A DNA stretch of 64,000 nucleotides from Botryllus schlosseri (lineage: Eukaryota). Both the position numbers and the translations under genes were made by a program. Where the stretch lies: the NCBI GenBank assembly GCA_051294905.1, contig CM119371.1:22258001-22322000 (forward strand), read 5' to 3'. A model generated the notes under the pieces. The model was given only the letters and a program-made list of their open reading frames with translations, did no database searches and was not told the origin of the DNA. Below, piece after piece: positions 4,574 to 33,946 of this stretch (positions within the stretch are counted from its first letter, which is position 1; each line of letters starts with the position of its first letter).

Positions 4574-5190
4574 TAGGGCTGTTCAAAAATAACTTTTTTT
4601 CTCCGATTCAAGCCGGTCACCTCTTAAATCGTCAGGTTGCAGTAGAAAACCTTGCTCACCAAATTTCACTCGATTCCAACCAGTAAAGGCCTCCGCAGAT
4701 CCAATTGAAAATTTTAATTTATTATGGAAAATTAAAAAAAAAAAATTCCAATTTTTTTTGCCAACCCCATGAAATTGTTGAGCTGTCTTCAAAGACGGTG
4801 CAAAACAAATTTGAGTCAATTCCGACCAGTAGAAGCGGAGTTATGTGAGTTTTTCGTTGCTAAATCGCGGATTATCCACCAATCAAGGATAATCCGAGAA
4901 ATATCATCGAAAAACTCACATAACTCCGCTTCTACTGGTCGGAATTGACTCAAATTTGTTTTGCAACGTCTTTGAAGACAGCTCAACAATTTCATGGGGT
5001 TGGCAAAAAAATTTGGAATTTTTTTTTTTTAATTTTCCATAATAAATTAAAATTTTTAATTGGATCTGCGGAGGCCTTTACTGGTTGGAATCGAGTGAAA
5101 TTTGGTGAGCAAGGTTTTCTACTGCAACCTGACGATTTAAGAGGTGACCGGCTTGAATCGGGGAAAAAAAGTTATTTTTGAACAGCCCTA
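4574..5190. mobile_element. Foldback (near-perfect palindrome) hAT MITE, 617 bp
   Basis: tagggctgttcaaaaataac...gttatttttgaacagcccta; ~283-bp inverted arms (mirror ORFs 4583-4819 and 4945-5181 are nearly identical); perfect 8-bp TSD atgaacat (4566-4573, 5191-5198). Confidence 0.95.
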
Positions 5191-12000: not shown

Positions 12001-15000
12001 TTGTGACTTACTTCGCTGGGAAATATCCGTAAATGTGCCGTCAGCGCGTCAAAACGGCTTACTTTCCCTACGCCCCGTCGTCTCATTGTTTATTCGGTTT
12101 TGTCAGACGGTTTCGCCGAAATAGTGACTTGTACACCCGGCATATTTTACGTGTGCCAGCCCGGTCTTGAGAAAAGCTTATGTTTGATAACAGGGAGTCT
12201 GGTAGTGCACAGAACTGGAGGCGTTAGTTATTGTCGTAACGTGTACGCAATCAACTTCGGTGATTCATATTTGTATTTTTATGTTTGTTGATCGCATAAT
12301 TCCCCGGGTTGATGATGCAGCCGTACAGCATACTTGGTGCTGTGTAATTGCGCCCGGGGGATATCTTGAACTCTTGAAGCTTTATATATCCCTGAATTGC
12401 GCTGGGTAGATTTTATTTTGTTGGTTGTTCGTTCGTTTATTGTGTTTCTGTGGTATTGTACGAGGATTTAATGTCGTTTGTTGTCATGTTGTCAATAGTG
12501 AAGCAACATCTTTTTACATGGTGTCAAAAACTGACGAAATTAATTTCCGCCGAGGTTGAATCCCTCTTCTCTCTGCATTACTAGCGTCGGGTACAATTCA
12601 AGTGATATGTCACATCATGGAATGGATGCAACGCCAGTTGTGTCGAATCCGTCATTCTTGTTAATAACGCTACTGTCTGTTCGAAACTGCTTATATAAAC
12701 TTCCCTTGTATCGATATATCATAATAGTGACGGATGTACGGCTAGCTAGCTTGTATCCCGTGAGTTCGTAACTTTCCTGTGTCACCTGCATTGAATATGT
12801 TTTCGGCACTGTTACGAGTGAAAGTGTCATTAGAGCTCCACGAAGCAGCTCCTGTATCATCGTAACCGAATATGTTTCGGCAATTACGCCTATGTGTGTG
12901 TGTTGTCTAGTAATTGTGCATTATTCGTGAAGATGCATCTTGCAAATTCGATTAACTGCTAAATGTATGCGACCCCTCGTATAAATCTACTTTACAAATT
13001 ATTCGGTATGTCTCAAACCTTTATTTTCGACATCCGTTTGTAGTAGTTTGGTAAATTTACTTCTCTTTCGACGACCCGTGGCAGCAATACGTCTTACGTA
13101 TGTCACCTCAACTAACAGCTAGCCATCTTTGACACGTCCCCAATTCAAGCGGCCATGCGACTTTGTTGTATCATTCTTTCTGGCGAGTTAGTTCCTCCCT
13201 GATATCGTAGCACACAAAATCGCTGCCTTCCAGCGCACCTTTTCACCCGAGTCAATTAATACATCATCCGAACGCCACAGTACCGTACGGGCCCCGCGTG
13301 AGAAACAGACGATGTCTTAACGGAGTCGCTTTGATGATAATTTGCTCGTCAAATATTCCGCGGTGTTTCTGGCCGCCGAACCGAAATGACCGTGATGGCT
13401 CGTTGGTCTTTTTGGCTGCGGGTATTAGCAAAGCACACCGATTAGATCCATTCTTATGTATCTTTGCGTAGGCGCCTTATTGATGTTGCGCCGGGCCTGT
13501 TTACGTACCGTCTTGAGCGTTTTGAACCTTGACACCAGCGGAATGTTAATAGGCTGGTGACGAAACAAACGTGATTTTAGACTCGACTATGACGTGTGCG
13601 CTCGCCGGTACGAGCCGGTAACGTGGTGGTTGAGGTTTTATCAATAAACATTGGAATTTGTAGCCAGTGGGGTCAATAAACTAATACTTGTAAACTCCAG
13701 TAGAAGTAACGTGAATTTATGCTGCAATACAAGCATAAGTTCCAGTATTTCTTTCGAAGCAGGTAAAGACAACTACTCTAGGCATACTTTTGGTCAAAAG
13801 CGCAACACCGTTATGCAGAAATGGGTTTTCTTTTATCTAGATCAGGAAGGATTGATAACTGGTGCAAGACCTGAAAACTTACTCTAGTGCGATTAAAAGT
13901 CGTTTCGTTAATCCGAACCATAGAGGTACGCGCCGTCTCCGAATTTACTGTCAGATGCCTTTTTTTTTACCCGTGTGTAGGATATCCGTGCTTGGTCCGG
14001 GAGGCACTTTTATGCTTCCAGTGTTAGCTATATTGCTATGGCCATGTGTACTTGACAATAGAAGTATATACTATAACTTAACATAGTACGCCACCCCTAA
14101 TCACGGACTTCGTCGCTTGACATTCGTGCCGTGAGTCACGGCTTCGTGTTGCCTTTGTTGAAGTAACAACATTCAACATCAAACGTACTACAAAGACTCT
14201 CTTTGATTGATTGATTGACAATTGAATGGCCCTTCGCGATTTCGCCATGATATAGCAAAAGCGGATATTGATAAAACAATGACTTGCATAACTATGCTCT
14301 GATTCCAGCTACCTAATTTTCAAATAGGTGTTTGGAGAATCCACCCTTGGTATTCCGTTTCCAGTAGAAGTAGAAATACCTTCGTAAATATCAACTCCAG
14401 TACAAAAAGTAGCGATTTACAAGTAAGTAAACGGAATAGTAAAAAAGTACGCAATTTAGGTTTAGTTAGGCCTAAAAACCGGAATTATTCAAGTAGTTGC
14501 TTTTACCCGACCATAATTGGCCTTCCGAGGTGAAGGGTACTTCGTATGTTGTTCAATGGCGTCGTGCTAGGTCCTAGCGAACTGACACTGATTGTTGAAA
14601 ATGGGATGTACTTTGCTCTGTCCATTGTAAAACAGTTGACCTCGGATATGTACCCCTAACATGAACAGTTCACCATGAAACGTAATCTGCTTTAGAAAAC
14701 CGTTTCTCGCTAGCAAGGTTCCGCAGGTGGAAGCAATGTCAATATTGTCGCGTAAGTTACAAAACACGCGTCAGCAAACGTTTGTACTGTGTCGCACAAA
14801 TGGTCTACAAATAATCGAGTTAGCTTGTTCTTCCTTATTTAGACTGTGTGGGAATATTTTGACGAGATAATGCCGATTGTTGGAGCTGACCTGTGGAACT
14901 GAGAGAATGTTTGCTATGGTACTGAGAGAAGGTTTTCAGTGTCTGTTGAAATACCGAATAACAATAGCAGTTGGTTGTAACATAAGTTATAGAACTTGTA

Positions 15001-15027
15001 GTAATATATATCTTCTCTTAAAATGGA

Positions 15028-15280
15028 AATAATTGAGTAATACCGATCGCAATATGTGCAGTAGTAATCAGGAAGTCTTGCTATCTATTGTAAAATTATG
15101 TAGCTGGGATTTTCGTGAGGCAGAGGCCTAATTTACTATCTTCGCACAGGATGAGGAATAATTGAGTGATACTGATACCCATCGCAATATTATGTGCTGT
15201 TGTAATTAGGAAGTCCCGCTATCTATTTTTAAAATGGGTATCTGGAATTTCCGTGGCATAGCCCCAAATGTACTAATGCT
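15028..15280. repeat. Diverged tandem duplication, period ~129 bp
   Basis: aataattgagt...atcgcaatat...aggaagtc...gctatctatt at 15028 and 15157. Confidence 0.75.
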
Positions 15281-15490
15281 GAAAACAAAACGCATATCTT
15301 GGAAAGGGTTGGGGCAAAAAAGGCGACAGGGAAATTAGTCAGGGCAGAATAGCAGACGTCCGTCATAATTAGATTCACAGTAAATGGTTTTGCCGCGCGA
15401 AAAACGAGATTTATGCCATATTAGCTTATCTTTAATTGAGGTTAACACAGTCGCAAGTATTTTTCTCGAGATCCAAAGCGAGTGTATGCG

Positions 15491-16030
15491 AAAATTGAAG
15501 CATGACGTCACAGTGTAGATGAAGTCATACTGGGCCTACGATAACTTATCGTAGGCCCCGGTCATACAGTAGAACATACTGGATGTAATTGTGATTATGG
15601 CATGATTTCAAACAGTAACCGATCCTCAGAATAAAATTAGGTACGTAAGCGACCGTTCGTCAAAATTGAAGTATGACGTAACAGTCACAATCATATAGCT
15701 GAATACTCTGGATGTATTTGGGATTTCGGGATAGTTTGAAGCAGCGAACTGGGTAAAAGTGGTATATCATCAAAGTATCACCGGTTGAGTTGCGCTTTAG
15801 TTACATTTGAAGGAAATACGTCATAGTGTCGATGATGTCATACAGTCGGATATTCTGGATGTAATCGTTTTTTTTTCAGGGTTCGAAAGGGTCATTTAGC
15901 CCTAAAATAGAATCAGGTAAAAATTCTATATTGACAAGTATTACCCATTGGATTAGGCACAATGGAATTATGACGTCATATAGTTGCGTATTTTGGATGT
16001 AATTGGGATTTGGGGGCATGCTTTGGTAGG
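15491..16030. repeat. Degenerate tandem array, 4 units of ~130-150 bp
   Basis: Recurring tgacgtca...(c/t)tggatgta at ~15579, 15708, 15856, 15994. Confidence 0.7.
15531..15560. mobile_element. 30-bp palindromic micro-insertion with 7-bp TSD (copy 1)
   Basis: gtcatac|tgggcctacgataacttatcgtaggccccg|gtcatac; the paralogous array unit at ~15837 has a single gtcatac. Confidence 0.8.
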
Positions 16031-16584
16031 GATGGGTAGGAAGTAACCTATCGTCAAGCATAGAATTAGGTAATATTTTATATTGTCCAAACTTTACCGA
16101 TTGATTAGTGCGAATTTTTCGAAATGTGAGCAAGTCGTTAGTCAACTCTCGTAAACGTTTTCCGAATTACCACATTATGCATTTCTATTAGCTCGATTAC
16201 GGCCGTCACGAAATCGCCCTAAATATCCTTTATTTACGATCGGTAACGACCGGTTAACAGATGAAAGCGTGATTGGCCTTCACGGTAATTACGCGGTCAT
16301 TGCACAAAAGCGGGCGACATCCGCCGACCCGTTAATCAGCAGCTATAAATTACGTTACCCCAAATCGATCCCGCGCGCTCATACGCGATCGCCGGACCGT
16401 GGCGCGGTTGTATTAATCGTCACAAAGACCGGAGTGCCGAGTACTGAATCGTGCATCTGTGGCTAGACATAACTCGTCACTCCCATGTAACTATATGAGT
16501 TGCTATTACTTGTATATACCAGATAACTACCTTGGTGTAAGGGGCGAATCCAGCCAATTCTAAATGGGTAAGCAAGTCGAACTA

Positions 16585-16717
16585 CAATTCTTATGGAGAT
16601 GCATACCAGGGGTGTAGTGGGTTAGTGTAGTTGGTTATGTTCACGTGTAACAAATTTTTGCGCCTTCGCGAATACGGAAGCCTTTCCACCCCTGGTATAG
16701 ATCTCCATAAGAAATTG
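16585..16717. repeat. 133-bp inverted-repeat element with ~30-bp arms
   Basis: caattcttatggagatgcataccaggggtg vs cacccctggtatagatctccataagaaattg (2 mismatches, 1 indel). Confidence 0.75.
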
Positions 16718-17036
16718 CGTCTTTGTAACGTTCTTCACCCGTTTGAATGGACGCGAAAGCAAACTTTTATGCGCACATTCGGCTATGGTTGAAATCCCCG
16801 AAATGCTACATTTTCGTTTACAAACCTTGGACAGGCGATGGACACTTGACTGTCAGCGACGGAAGACGGTATCTATTGCCTCTGATATATTTTCAATCTG
16901 TTATAGTATACCGGGAATAGTAACTCCATATTTTCATGTCCGTAATGCAATTTTCGTGAAAGTGCTCCTCAATTTAACTTTGAAAATGAATTGGTTCCGT
17001 ATCTACGAATGGCTGTTGTTAGGTTTTGACTCCTAG

Positions 17037-17066
17037 CGAAGGCGGCAGATCAGCAGAGACGAGCAA
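17037..17066 (+). CDS. Candidate 30-bp coding micro-exon of the host gene (EGGRSAETSK)
   Basis: ttttgactcctag|...|gtacgc; phase 2 end would join the 19835 exon in frame; unconfirmed. Confidence 0.3.
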
Positions 17067-17340
17067 GTACGCATTAATTTGTATTTGCCATGGCTCATTT
17101 CCGATTTTGCCTACCTGGATTGCATCTGCTGGACATGTAGTTCCAGGAAATTTATGTCTCAAGTTAATGCAACTTCGAATGAATTGCGGTTCGCAGCTGA
17201 TTATGAACGAGGGTTTGGTCGCGTTTTACGAGAAATGCGGGCTTGAAAATTAGAATCTGTAATCCCTAACCTAATCCTGATAACTGGTACTGGGGATTCC
17301 GACACATTTTTTCCAATTTCGAATCCTCTGACTTTGAGTT

Positions 17341-17400
17341 CATAGAAATAACCAAGATTTAAAAGCCCTCCATAGAAATAACCAAGATTTAAAAGCCCTC
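17341..17400. repeat. Perfect 30-bp tandem duplication
   Basis: catagaaataaccaagatttaaaagccctc x2. Confidence 0.97.
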
Positions 17401-17426
17401 AATTTCACATACATTGGTACTGGTTG

Positions 17427-17457
17427 CGGGGCCTACGATAAGTTATCGTAGGCCCCG
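17427..17457. mobile_element. 31-bp perfect palindromic micro-insertion with 7-bp TSD (copy 2)
   Basis: ctggttg|cggggcctacgataagttatcgtaggccccg|ctggttg; 15-bp arms plus 1 central base. Confidence 0.85.
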
Positions 17458-19029
17458 CTGGTTGCTTCTGCAAACGCACCCGCGATACATTGCAAGGAAA
17501 CAGCACCCCCAGTTTGCTGTAAATAACTCTTGCGTTCTCGGTGTACCGTTGATTACCGACGAAAAAGCCAATTTATCATCCGTTAGTTATCAGACACGCA
17601 TATTTGTACATAACTCGGTCATGCGCCCGACTATTTGATTGACACATTCCGGTCAATAAATTGACGGACATCCGATTACGCGTCCAATAAATAAATTCGG
17701 TTCGCATCAATTCAGTTCATGTACGTACAGTCGTACAAGCGTTAATGACAGATTTAGGGTAAACAAAAAGTCAAGTGCGTATTGGCGTGATGTTGCCACG
17801 CAGCAGGTTTACGTAGTATGTAATGCAACTTACGTTTTAATCGGAGGATTATCCTCGCTTTTACCACCCAGGATCAGTATATAAACTGCTAACTTTGTTA
17901 CGTCACTACCATGATGCTGTTTCGTCATCATTATGCATAATGTAGGATAAAAATTGTCGAATAATCTTTGCTATAAAATGACAGCATGTTGGTGGTAGTA
18001 TATGTGCGGACCTACGCTATGCAGCGTTGTAAATGCGCCTCGCCAGAGTCATAACAAGCTATATCGTCGGAATGAAGCTAATCGTTAACCCAGTAGAACT
18101 GCAAATGACATATTTATTCTGCTGTTAGCGGTGATAGTAATGTTGGCAGACAGTGCTAAGTCCATCGCTATCGTAGTCTGCCTTATGCATCAATAGGGCG
18201 TTGATGAGATTGGCCTATATTGTCGCTGGTCGTTACTGCATAGCGTCTTTTCGACAAGCTGTCTGCCTGTCTGCGACGTTTTAGGGAAATAATTTTATGC
18301 GCTGTAATAGTACAGAACAAGCCAGTGGCTGCGGACTTGTGTGGTTTTCGAGAGCTTATTTTCAAAGTTGGCAGCTCATATCAGGTCAAGTGCAATCGTG
18401 TGCGTCTTCATTGCCTTGTATATGCGTCTGGATGAGCCTTGTGGTTGTTTTAGAGAGCGTGTGATAGGTCAGTTTTAAAGGAGTTTACATAACAAGGATG
18501 TTGCACAGTGGTCCTTGGAATTTTGGAGTAGAGAGGTGCGATGAGGCTTTGTCGCTATTTGTATACATCCGAGAATCCTATCATCGAGGAATCGAGGAGT
18601 AACATGAAGATTTTGCCAATCTTTGAACATGTATTCAACGTCCATTATCTCGTAAAATATGCGTCATAATTTCACGCAAAAACCGGTATGTTTATCATGA
18701 TTGACGACCGCGAAAAAAAACGACAAAAATACAGTCAGAAGCGGGACCGTACAGAGTATTCACTCAACTCCGACTTGGTACTCGGAGTCAGCAGCCAGTC
18801 CGATGTTGGTGACGCTGCGTCACGCTTGAACTAGCGAGAGAAATGTCGGAAGCCACAACAAAGTCGGTCGTAGTATAGCAACGTGACTGTAGCCAGTACT
18901 TGTGGCTTTATTTAGCAAGCCGAGACCGCGATTCGAGAAAAAGAGCGCAAATTTTAAACTCCACCGCTTCCAAAAGACAGTATTACTACCTTTATATAAG
19001 CAGTTTTCAGTGTTATACTGTACAAGTGT

Positions 19030-28072: not shown

Positions 28073-28631
28073 CAGGGTTGTAACCTGTAACCAAGTCACA
28101 AGATTCCGAGTCACAAGTCAATCACACTTTTATGGTTTTGACTCGAGTCAAGTCGAGTCATTTTTAATGCGCCACGAGTCAGTCCGAGTCCAAGTCAGTG
28201 AGTAGAGGGCCGAGTCATAGTATTGTGACTCGAGTCCAAGTCATTGTGTTCGCTGCTGGTTTAGAGTTTAATGCGCTTTAACCCACTTTTCCCGACTCTG
28301 CTCGAGTGATATAGAATGGTTCGCATTCATAATATAGTATTTTTCGTCAGTTTTAACAGTTTCCTGCCCAATTGTCCAAGTATTAGGACTGATGGACGAA
28401 ATACCAACTTTACTGTTCTTCGAAGTTACAATGAAATGTCTGTCTTGGCCGTCCTAATCTCGAGTCGTATTATTTATTCGAGTCGTGTACAATGACTCTA
28501 GTAAAAATCGAGTTGATACACAACTTGACTCGAGTCGAGTCGAATCATTTTACGAATTTGAAAAAATGACTCGAGTCAAGTCGAGTCGCCAAAAAATCGT
28601 GACCCTTGATATTCGACTCGACTCTGTCGAG
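28073..28631. mobile_element. hAT MITE family A (CAGGGTTGTAA end, GACTCGAGTC-rich), right end disrupted
   Basis: Left end and interior match 37017-38675 and 62871-63257; foldback element inserted at its right end. Confidence 0.8.
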
Positions 28632-29307
28632 TAGGGGTGTTCAAAAATGACTTTTTCTCTCAAATTCTACTGGCTACTTAATAAGATCGTTCGGTTACCT
28701 AATTGAAGCCTGCACACCGAATTCGGTTCAATTCCAACCATTAGCCGCATTGCTACAGGAGAAGACGGTTATTTATTTATTATTAAAAAATGAATGAAAA
28801 GAATTTCAAAATTTTCTGTTCGCCCCATGAAATTGTTCAGTTGTCTATAGAAACGATGTTCACCCAATTTGGCTCAATTCCAACCAACGGAAGCGGAGTT
28901 ATTGATGTCGAAAAATTTTGATTTGAATAAATAGTACGGTATTCACGGTGAGCACAATCATAATAGAAAATTCAATAATTGGCCAATGTAAATACTATTT
29001 TATTCAATTCCAAATTTTTTCGACGGCATTAACTCCGCTTCCAGTGGTTGAAAATTGAAATTGAGCCAAATTGGGTGAGCATCGTTTCTATAGACAACCT
29101 AAAAATTTCATGGGGTGAACTGGAAATTTTGAATTTTTTTCATTCATTTCCTCATAATAAATAACAAAAACTTACTTCTCCTGTAGCAATGCGGCTACTA
29201 GTTGGAATTGAACCAAATTTGGTGTGTAGACTTTAATAAGGTAACCTAACAATTTTATCAAGTAGCCAGTTGAATTTGAGAGAGAAAGTCGTTTTCGAAC
29301 ACCCCTA
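28632..29307. mobile_element. Foldback hAT MITE, 676 bp
   Basis: taggggtgttc...gaacaccccta; ~300-bp imperfect inverted arms; perfect TSD ctgtcgag (28624-28631, 29308-29315). Confidence 0.95.
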
Positions 29308-33417: not shown

Positions 33418-33946
33418 TAGGGCTGGGCACAATGATTCGAGTACTCGAATCTGAATCGAGTATTAATTTTAATGATTCGAGTCGAGTAGTAAAAGACGAT
33501 TTTTTCGAGTACTGAAATTATACGCTCCTCACCACTGAAAGTTGATTTATCAACGAGGAGTTTATCAACGATCAACGAGTTTATGCTAATTTCACTGTTG
33601 AAGCCTTGAAACCTTGATTGGCCGTATCGCAGCATGCGAAACATGAAGTACAAAGCTACGAACGTTACTGGAAATAGCACATTTCCGAAGTCATGATCAC
33701 CCCACAATATTGTCACCAAGTGTAATGAAATCGGTATGGTCGAAAAAAATAACAAAGTATCCTTAATATGATGGATAACAGTCATTATATTCTTTGTGGT
33801 CGCTTAAAAGGTACATATTTGAACTTTGACAAATAATATTCTGCTATGACGTCATAATGAGTGATACTCGATTACTCGACTCGACTCGAAGCATTTTACG
33901 TGATTCAGAATCGAATCACTCAGGTACTCGATTTTGCCCAGCCCTA
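33418..33946. mobile_element. hAT MITE family G, 529 bp
   Basis: tagggctgggca / tgcccagcccta; perfect TSD ttagccat (33410-33417, 33947-33954). Confidence 0.95.

What the first reader, a model, noticed from the sequence alone, without database searches (positions are those of the whole stretch)
17420..17464. Candidate ultra-short mobile element: 31-bp perfect palindrome with a perfect 7-bp TSD
Seen: ctggttg|CGGGGCCTACGATAA-G-TTATCGTAGGCCCCG|ctggttg. A second copy 1.9 kb away has an unrelated 7-bp direct repeat and the complementary central base (C instead of G), so it is in the opposite orientation. Established: even very small MITEs such as MADE1 are about 80 bp; 7-bp TSDs are uncommon and typical of P-superfamily elements such as Galileo and 1360/Hoppel, whereas the other readable TSDs here are 8 bp (hAT) or TTAA (piggyBac). 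Inference: a shared 1-nt centre in two independent sites suggests the 31-mer itself is mobilised, as two abutting 15-bp TIRs, by an unidentified transposase that is not encoded in this window.
Basis: partly seen in the sequence, partly recalled or inferred. Interest (0 to 1): 0.78.

Follow-up and report, generated by a model that had tools for sequence, protein, structure and literature searches.

The report
Transposon excision scars, not a micro-transposon
The two 31-base palindromes boxed in by short target duplications are most likely scars left when a P-element-like cut-and-paste transposon jumped out and about 15 bases of each end stayed behind; this is a known kind of scar, not a new ultra-short mobile element.

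Summary
At 17427-17457 there is a perfect 15+1+15 palindrome between two exact copies of ctggttg. A second copy lies at 15530-15560, with one changed base and centre C.

Both are real insertions. Neighbouring repeat units and a multi-copy, about 92% identical contig lack exactly 37 nt at site 2, with 7 ambiguous bases.

Contigs of one public sample show the 31-mer at many loci. In each run, 13-20 contigs with mostly unrelated flanks break exactly at 17427 and 8-15 at 17457. Some copies differ at the centre: the middle base is missing, or 3-11 filler letters sit between partly duplicated arm pieces.

This is the pattern of Drosophila P-element excision. The transposase cuts 17 nt inside each end. 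End joining then leaves TSD + 14-17 nt + 14-17 nt + TSD, with recurrent palindromic junctions and templated fillers (PMC7776569, PMC2895639). A 7-bp duplication fits the 1360/Galileo branch of the P superfamily (PMC3698922).

I therefore read these as excision scars (about 0.7). A mobilised 31-mer is unlikely (about 0.08).

No full-length element or transposase is in the window, so P-superfamily membership is untested.

The scan had already noted the same kind of scar from other families on other pieces of this genome.

The parts
17420..17426 (+). left copy of the 7-bp target-site duplication (ctggttg), site 1
   Evidence: contigs from other loci lose their match exactly before 17427
17427..17441 (+). 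left arm: the outermost 15 nt of one transposon end (CGGGGCCTACGATAA)
17442..17442 (+). junction base G: base 16 of one end, or the outcome of a G-G mismatch or a 1-nt fill-in
   Evidence: some contigs show 'left out 1' at 17443
17443..17457 (+). right arm: the outermost 15 nt of the other transposon end, inverted
17458..17464 (+). right copy of the 7-bp target-site duplication (ctggttg), site 1
   Evidence: loose ends start behind 17457
15524..15530 (+). left copy of GTCATAC, site 2; its last base is also the first base of the palindrome
   Evidence: the joint 15523->15561 skips 37 nt with 7 ambiguous bases
15530..15560 (+). second scar: 15+C+15 palindrome with one changed base at its outer left end (CT where CG is expected)
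   Evidence: D10, I2
15561..15567 (+). right copy of GTCATAC, site 2
15837..15843 (+). empty site in a paralogous repeat unit (unit 3): GTCATAC present once, no palindrome
   Evidence: alignment A1
15975..15981 (+). empty site in a paralogous repeat unit (unit 4): GTCATAT present once, no palindrome

Best explanation
Each palindrome is the scar of a cut-and-paste DNA transposon that inserted here, made a 7-bp target duplication, and later excised.

The proposed mechanism follows the Drosophila P element. The transposase cuts one strand at the element boundary and the other strand about 16-17 nt inside the terminal inverted repeat. Each donor flank therefore keeps a long 3' single-stranded tail made of the element's own end. 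Host end joining then joins the two tails almost at full length. The result is TSD + 15 nt + 1 nt + 15 nt (inverted) + TSD.

The centre base is G or C according to which tail supplied base 16. Alternatively, two identical 17-nt tails ending in AGT overlap by 3 nt around a G-G mismatch, and the base depends on how that mismatch is resolved. This would give exactly 31 nt.

What is shown: insertion with a TSD, empty paralogous sites, many loci with the same 31-nt boundaries, and varied junctions in some copies. What is inferred: the long staggered cut, a P-type transposase, and the full-length parent element. Some copies may also have multiplied passively inside a host repeat.
For: The structure is exact: a 15+1+15 palindrome with a 7-bp TSD.

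It is an insertion. Two units of the same local repeat carry the target 7-mer once with no palindrome. A multi-copy, about 92% identical contig skips exactly 37 nt between 15523 and 15561, with 7 bases fitting either side.

It occurs at many loci. In each run, 13-20 contigs carry loose ends before 17427 and 8-15 behind 17457. The loose-end consensus agreement is 0.42-0.46, against 0.38-0.45 expected for random flanks, depending on contig number. Between 37 and 84 contigs per run fit both sites. The summed depth at 17443 is 187-350 times that of the exact own-locus contigs.

The junctions vary. The middle base is missing in 4-10 contigs per run. Joints carry 3-11 filler letters between partly duplicated arm pieces, for example a filler that repeats ACGATA from the arm itself.

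There is a direct published parallel. The P element has a 17-nt staggered cut (PMC7776569). P{wa} repair junctions read 8-bp TSD + up to 17 nt + filler or microhomology + up to 17 nt + TSD. They include recurrent perfect palindromes of 30 and 32 bp and templated insertions (PMC2895639).

7-bp TSDs are those of 1360 and Galileo in the P superfamily (PMC3698922).

Other well-studied superfamilies leave little or no element-end sequence. hAT, Mutator and Transib make hairpins on the flank, and piggyBac makes them on the element (PMC5499845).

The consensus of the 7 nt to the left and to the right of the palindrome over many contigs agrees at 6/7 (X1) and 5/7 (X4). This hints at 7-nt duplications genome-wide.
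Against: No full-length element with these ends and no transposase is in the window. The P-type parent is therefore inferred.

Most of the depth that could be laid across the centre (86-92%) has the same 15+1+15 form. This is more uniform than the Drosophila junction spectra. Laying favours near-identical copies, and passive amplification inflates this class, but the uniformity is also what a mobile unit would give.

An odd-length palindrome cannot come from perfect microhomology. It needs a blunt 16+15 join or a mismatched overlap.

The contigs come from a single sample, probably the one that was assembled, so nothing is known about polymorphism between individuals.

The cleavage chemistry of several other superfamilies is unknown. 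Dada, for example, has 6-7 bp TSDs (this last point is from my own knowledge).
Confidence: 0.7

Rival explanations
1. The 31-mer is itself a mobile element, an ultra-short MITE made of two abutting 15-bp inverted repeats. A transposase encoded elsewhere cuts it out and pastes it in.
For: It has perfect ends and a TSD. It occurs at many loci with the same 31-nt boundaries and mostly unrelated flanks, and one architecture dominates among the copies that could be laid. Two copies lie within 1.9 kb.
Against: Centre variants and filler-bearing junctions exist. Recurrent identical scars are documented from excision of a single P insertion, so uniformity is not diagnostic. In the P element the transposase binding sites lie inside the element, beyond the terminal repeats (PMC7776569), and a 31-mer has no room for such sites. 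Pairing two ends that lie 1 bp apart on stiff duplex DNA is sterically hard; this is inference. Part of the copy number is explained by a host repeat that carries the scar (records 7 and 19).
Confidence: 0.08
2. The palindromes are extreme internal-deletion remnants. After excision, the gap was partly refilled from a sister copy and the nascent ends were joined (synthesis-dependent strand annealing followed by end joining). Only the tips of the element remained. This could happen with any cut-and-paste superfamily and needs no long staggered cut.
For: The TSD and both element tips are retained. Interrupted repair synthesis followed by end joining is the commonest outcome of P{wa} repair in wild-type flies (PMC2895639). 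It is the accepted route to deleted non-autonomous elements; this last point is from my own knowledge.
Against: Such breakpoints should scatter over tens to hundreds of bases. Here both sites, and most laid copies, keep the same 15-16 nt per end, just under the 17-nt limit set by a P-type cut.
Confidence: 0.12
3. The palindromes are only passengers of a larger repeat. One ancient event was copied when the surrounding repeat multiplied, so the two sites are not independent events.
For: The stretch 15351-17694 is itself multi-copy, with a related contig at 17-20 times the own-locus depth. High-depth contigs match 13 nt of left flank plus 29 nt of copy 2.
Against: The two sites have unrelated flanks and different duplications. 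The multi-copy consensus contig lacks the site-2 insertion. Dozens of contigs have unrelated flanks. This rival explains some of the copy number but not the origin.
Confidence: 0.04

Closest known systems
Drosophila P-element excision footprints (donor-site end joining after the 17-nt staggered cut)
   Same: The layout is TSD, then up to 17 nt of each inverted terminal repeat joined head to head, then TSD. Palindromic junctions recur, and some events carry filler letters templated from the arms (PMC7776569; PMC2895639 Tables 1-3).
   Different: The TSD is 7 bp, not 8. The junction has an odd length (15+1+15). The scars sit in an assembled genome at many loci rather than being recovered in a genetic screen. 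The end sequence is unrelated to the fly P element. The parent element and its transposase were not seen.
1360/Hoppel and Galileo (P-superfamily families with 7-bp TSDs)
   Same: The duplication is 7 bp (PMC3698922).
   Different: Those families are described from Drosophila. There is no sequence similarity to test and no transposase here. As far as I found, their cleavage stagger has not been measured.
MITEs (miniature inverted-repeat elements such as MADE1, BuT5 or Anopheles P-MITEs)
   Same: They have inverted ends and a TSD, lack coding capacity, and occur in many copies.
   Different: This unit is 31 nt with no internal sequence at all, well below the sizes reported for MITEs (about 80 bp upward; own knowledge). 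Variation is concentrated at the junction. Nothing shows that the short form itself moves.
hAT excision footprints
   Same: They are small palindromic remnants between TSD copies.
   Different: hAT makes hairpins on the flanking DNA, so its footprints are built from flank bases, not from 15 nt of element end (PMC5499845). Its TSD is 8 bp, as in the hAT-like MITEs of this window.

Membership tests
P-type excision scar (process) | Both copies of the target-site duplication are kept, at the length typical of the superfamily (7 or 8 bp) | tested here: met
   Site 1 has an exact 7 bp on both sides. The boundaries are fixed by the loose ends at 17427 and 17457. Site 2 has GTCATAC on both sides and 37 extra nt.
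P-type excision scar (process) | The retained material is the outermost 17 nt or fewer of each end, in inverted orientation | tested here: met
   Each side keeps 15 nt, plus one junction base. That these are the ends of a real longer element could not be shown in the window.
P-type excision scar (process) | Independent sites differ at the junction (variable trimming, microhomology, templated filler) | tested here: inconclusive
   One search shows centre-deleted copies (7-14% of the depth) and at least five filler-bearing joints. Only summary tables from the contigs of one sample were available, and the 15+1+15 form dominates.
P-type excision scar (process) | An empty-site allele or paralogue shows that the sequence was inserted | tested here: met
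   Alignment A1 and the joint that skips 37 nt with 7 ambiguous bases.
P superfamily (membership of the parent element) | Full-length copies with the same ends encode a P-type transposase (THAP finger, RNase H fold with a GTP-binding insertion) | not testable with these tools
   There is no such element or ORF in the window, and no tool could search this genome. Earlier notes of the scan report P-type transposons elsewhere in the genome. I did not check them.
P superfamily (membership of the parent element) | The 5' strand is cut about 17 nt inside the terminal repeat | not testable with these tools
   This is inferred only from the 15-16 nt retained per end. It needs a biochemical or scar-census test.
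MITE (mobile short element) | Terminal inverted repeats and a TSD, in many copies with unrelated flanks | tested here: met
MITE (mobile short element) | The short form itself transposes (new insertions of the short form; internal sequence that the transposase can bind) | not tested
   No data from several individuals were available. By analogy with the P element, the binding sites lie inside the element beyond the terminal repeats, and the 31-mer has none.
hAT footprint | An 8-bp TSD and a footprint made of flank-derived bases | tested here: not met
   The TSD is 7 bp and the shared 31 nt are element-derived, being the same at two sites with unrelated flanks.

The most novel reading that the evidence does not exclude
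The 31-mer is a genuinely mobile unit, the shortest known eukaryotic transposable element. It would have no internal sequence and would be moved as two abutting 15-bp ends by a P-type transposase acting in trans, perhaps pairing ends from two different copies.
Probability: 0.07. Interest if true: 0.8.

Novelty: new member of a known kind. Interest (0 to 1): 0.3.

Why it matters
If the reading holds, scars of this kind are a natural record of where a transposase cuts. The retained arm length reports the stagger of an enzyme that nobody has purified. It would suggest that the unusually long P-element stagger is also present in an animal far from flies.

The scars also show that this family was active by cut-and-paste and that its donor sites were repaired by end joining.

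In practice, 30-40-bp palindromes between 7-8-bp duplications should be annotated as excision scars, not as miniature transposons.

It is not a new kind of system, and the scan had already seen the same thing from other families in this genome.

Tried and rejected
- **Longer element in the window.** I searched for one with the same ends. The 15-mer at up to 2 mismatches gives only the four arms. The 13-mer at up to 3 mismatches is at chance level, 15 hits against 11.6 expected.
- **Transposase in the window.** Only six ORFs reach 130 aa, and none has a Pfam match.
- **Scan for elements with inverted ends and a TSD.** It finds only hAT-like elements with 8-bp TSDs and nothing with 7 bp.
- **More scars of other families in the window.** The one further candidate (33437-33488) is a local repeat of a TCGAGTA motif and was rejected.
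- **Metagenome scan.** A search for the two arms with a 0-30-nt centre gave 0 hits. I did not use the second scan, because a 15-16-mer alone would drown in chance hits.
- **Earlier findings by sequence.** Blank.
- **Kimbacher et al. 2009 on Ciona P elements.** The paper is not held.
- **Literature on genome-wide fossil P-type scars.** The search found no such study. This is not proof that none exists.
- **30 nt + 8-bp TSD (hAT-like) reading of site 1.** Rejected, because contigs from other loci share the sequence from exactly 17427 to 17457.
- **Empty site for copy 1.** Not obtained. The related multi-copy contig replaces 17179-17463 with 195 other letters.

Full report
**1. What is there**

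At 17427-17457 the window holds a perfect 31-nt palindrome. It has a 15-nt arm (CGGGGCCTACGATAA), a centre G, and the arm's reverse complement. Exact copies of ctggttg lie directly on both sides, at 17420-17426 and 17458-17464.

The arm occurs four times in the window at up to 2 mismatches, against 0.06 expected. These four hits are the two arms of this site and the two arms of a second site at 15530-15560.

A script looked for short palindromes flanked by direct repeats of 7 nt or more. It found only these two sites, and none in ten shuffled windows. A second script required exact 7- or 8-nt repeats around an insert with inverted ends. It again found site 1 and none in twenty shuffles.

The second site differs in three details:
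- Its centre is C.
- Its outer left end reads CT where CG is expected.
- Its flanking repeat GTCATAC overlaps the first base of the 31-mer.

Site 2 therefore adds 37 nt, while site 1 adds 38.

**2. Both are insertions**

Site 2 lies in one unit of a local repeat of about 130-150 nt. Two other units carry GTCATAC or GTCATAT once at the homologous place, without the palindrome (15837-15843 and 15975-15981, alignment A1).

I laid the contigs of four public runs on 15300-17700. All four come from one sample, probably the one that was assembled. A contig about 92% identical to the window covers 15351-17694. It has 17-20 times the depth of the exact own-locus contigs. It skips exactly 37 nt between 15523 and 15561, with 7 bases that fit either side. 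That is an empty site.

For site 1 no empty site was obtained. The same contig replaces 17179-17463 with 195 other letters.

**3. The 31-mer occurs at many loci, and its centre varies**

All figures in this section come, unless stated otherwise.

- In each run, 13-20 contigs match up to 17427 and then run on into unlike sequence on the left. Another 8-15 do the same behind 17457.
- The consensus of these loose ends agrees at only 0.42-0.46. Random flanks give 0.38-0.45, depending on the number of contigs. Most of these loci are therefore unrelated.
- The breaks lie exactly at 17427 and 17457. The shared unit is thus the 31-mer, and the site-1 duplication is 7 bp, not 8.
- Between 37 and 84 contigs per run fit both sites.
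- The summed depth at 17443 is 187-350 times that of the own-locus contigs. The tool warns that this is not a copy number. Part of it comes from a host repeat that carries the scar: a 47-nt contig at 24 times own-locus depth and a 197-nt contig at 46 times. Both match 13 nt of left flank plus 29 nt of copy 2.

Not all copies are alike:
- In 4-10 contigs per run the middle base is missing (7-14% of the depth).
- At least five low-copy joints carry 3-11 filler letters between partly duplicated arm pieces.
- One filler repeats ACGATA, which is taken from the arm itself.

The 7 nt to the left and the 7 nt to the right of the palindrome, taken as consensus over many contigs, agree at 6/7 (X1), 5/7 (X4) and 3/7 (X2). 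This is a hint that 7-nt duplications are general.

**4. Mechanism**

The anatomy matches the scars of P-element excision in Drosophila.
- P transposase cuts the 3' strand at the element boundary and the 5' strand 17 nt inside the terminal repeat. This leaves 17-nt 3' tails (PMC7776569).
- After excision the donor ends carry 17-nt non-complementary tails made of element sequence (PMC2895639).
- The end-joined donor sites listed in that paper read 8-bp TSD, up to 17 nt of one end, microhomology or filler, up to 17 nt of the other end, then TSD.
- The same junction recurs from one insertion. The 14+AT+14 junction, a perfect 30-bp palindrome, was isolated 14 times. The 15+TA+15 junction was isolated 5 times. 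Many junctions carry insertions templated from the tails.

Two sites with the same junction architecture therefore do not need a mobile 31-mer.

An odd-length palindrome cannot come from perfect microhomology. It fits either of two routes:
- a blunt join of 16 and 15 nt; or
- two identical 17-nt tails ending in AGT that overlap by 3 nt around a G-G mismatch, which gives exactly 31 nt.

In both cases the centre becomes G or C regardless of the element's orientation. This step is my inference, and it predicts that bases 16-17 of the full repeat are G and T.

**5. Which transposon**

A 7-bp duplication is that of 1360 and Galileo in the P superfamily; the P element itself makes 8 bp (PMC3698922).

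The other well-studied superfamilies do not leave 15 nt of each end. hAT, Mutator and Transib form hairpins on the flanking DNA. piggyBac forms them on the element. Tc1/mariner makes simple double-strand cuts (PMC5499845).

The window contains hAT-like small elements with exact 8-bp duplications and TAGGG-type ends. It contains no element with the palindrome's ends and no recognisable transposase.

Membership of the parent element in the P superfamily is therefore untested. "Works like a P-element scar" is well supported. "Is a P element" is not shown.

**6. Rivals**

- **A mobile 31-mer.** It would explain the many loci and the dominant uniform form. It does not explain the junction variants. 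It also has no room for internal transposase binding sites such as the P element has. I give it 0.08.
- **An extreme internal deletion by interrupted gap repair.** This is possible for any superfamily. It predicts scattered breakpoints rather than 15-16 nt on both sides at both sites. I give it 0.12.
- **Passive copying inside a host repeat.** It explains part of the copy number but not the origin. I give it 0.04.

The two scars lie 1.9 kb apart although the family is sparse. This fits the local hopping known for P elements (PMC7776569). It is only an inference from two sites.

**7. Earlier notes of the scan**

Before I opened them I had recorded the scar reading. The notes then showed the following:
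- Other agents had read 34-bp (17+17) and 38-bp palindromes with 7-8-bp duplications, on other pieces of this same genome, as P-type excision scars.
- One note calls the organism a sea squirt. The runs I saw are coded, and I could not verify this.
- P-type transposons are reported elsewhere in the genome.
- One note on this window points to the built-in empty site at copy 2. I tested and confirmed that one.

The others are leads that agree with my reading. They are not independent evidence.

**8. Limits**

- No tool could search this genome outside the window.
- The read-laying tool allowed one call and returned truncated summary tables from the contigs of one sample. Polymorphism, exact copy number and the full spectrum of junctions remain open.
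- The metagenome scan for the palindrome with a variable centre found nothing.

**Verdict**

The interpretation as a self-mobile ultra-short element is not supported. The best reading is a pair of excision scars of a P-like transposon family. This is a new member of a known kind and of modest interest.

Noticed in passing
window 15000-16100: Array of diverged repeat units of about 129-151 nt. Copy 2 of the palindrome sits in one unit. A variant unit carrying the palindrome at the same place seems to be amplified elsewhere in the genome (contigs at 24-46 times own-locus depth).
   Followed up: partly
window 15351-17694: The whole stretch that holds both scars is itself a multi-copy repeat. A contig about 92% identical has 17-20 times the depth of the exact contigs, and it diverges from the window at both of these coordinates. 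No inverted ends or TSD were seen at these borders.
   Followed up: partly
window 17341-17400: An exact tandem duplication of a 30-nt unit lies 26 nt to the left of scar 1. Its relation to the scar, if any, is unknown.
   Followed up: no
window 16588-16713: 36-nt inverted arms (83% complementary) with an internal CCAGGGGTG motif. There is extra contig depth, and 7 loose ends at 16585 in one run. It is probably a small multi-copy MITE-like element.
   Followed up: no
window 4574-5190, 28154-28573, 28632-29307, 33418-33946: Small elements with inverted ends and exact 8-bp target duplications. Three begin TAGGG(C/G)TG, which is hAT-like; 28154-28573 begins CGAGTCATTT. The first (4574-5190) is almost a complete foldback.
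   Followed up: no
window 17427 and 17457 (flanks of other loci): The consensus of the 7 nt next to the palindrome over many loci reads GT...A. on both sides in most runs (one right-side consensus reads GC). This may be a weak target-site motif for the family.
   Followed up: no
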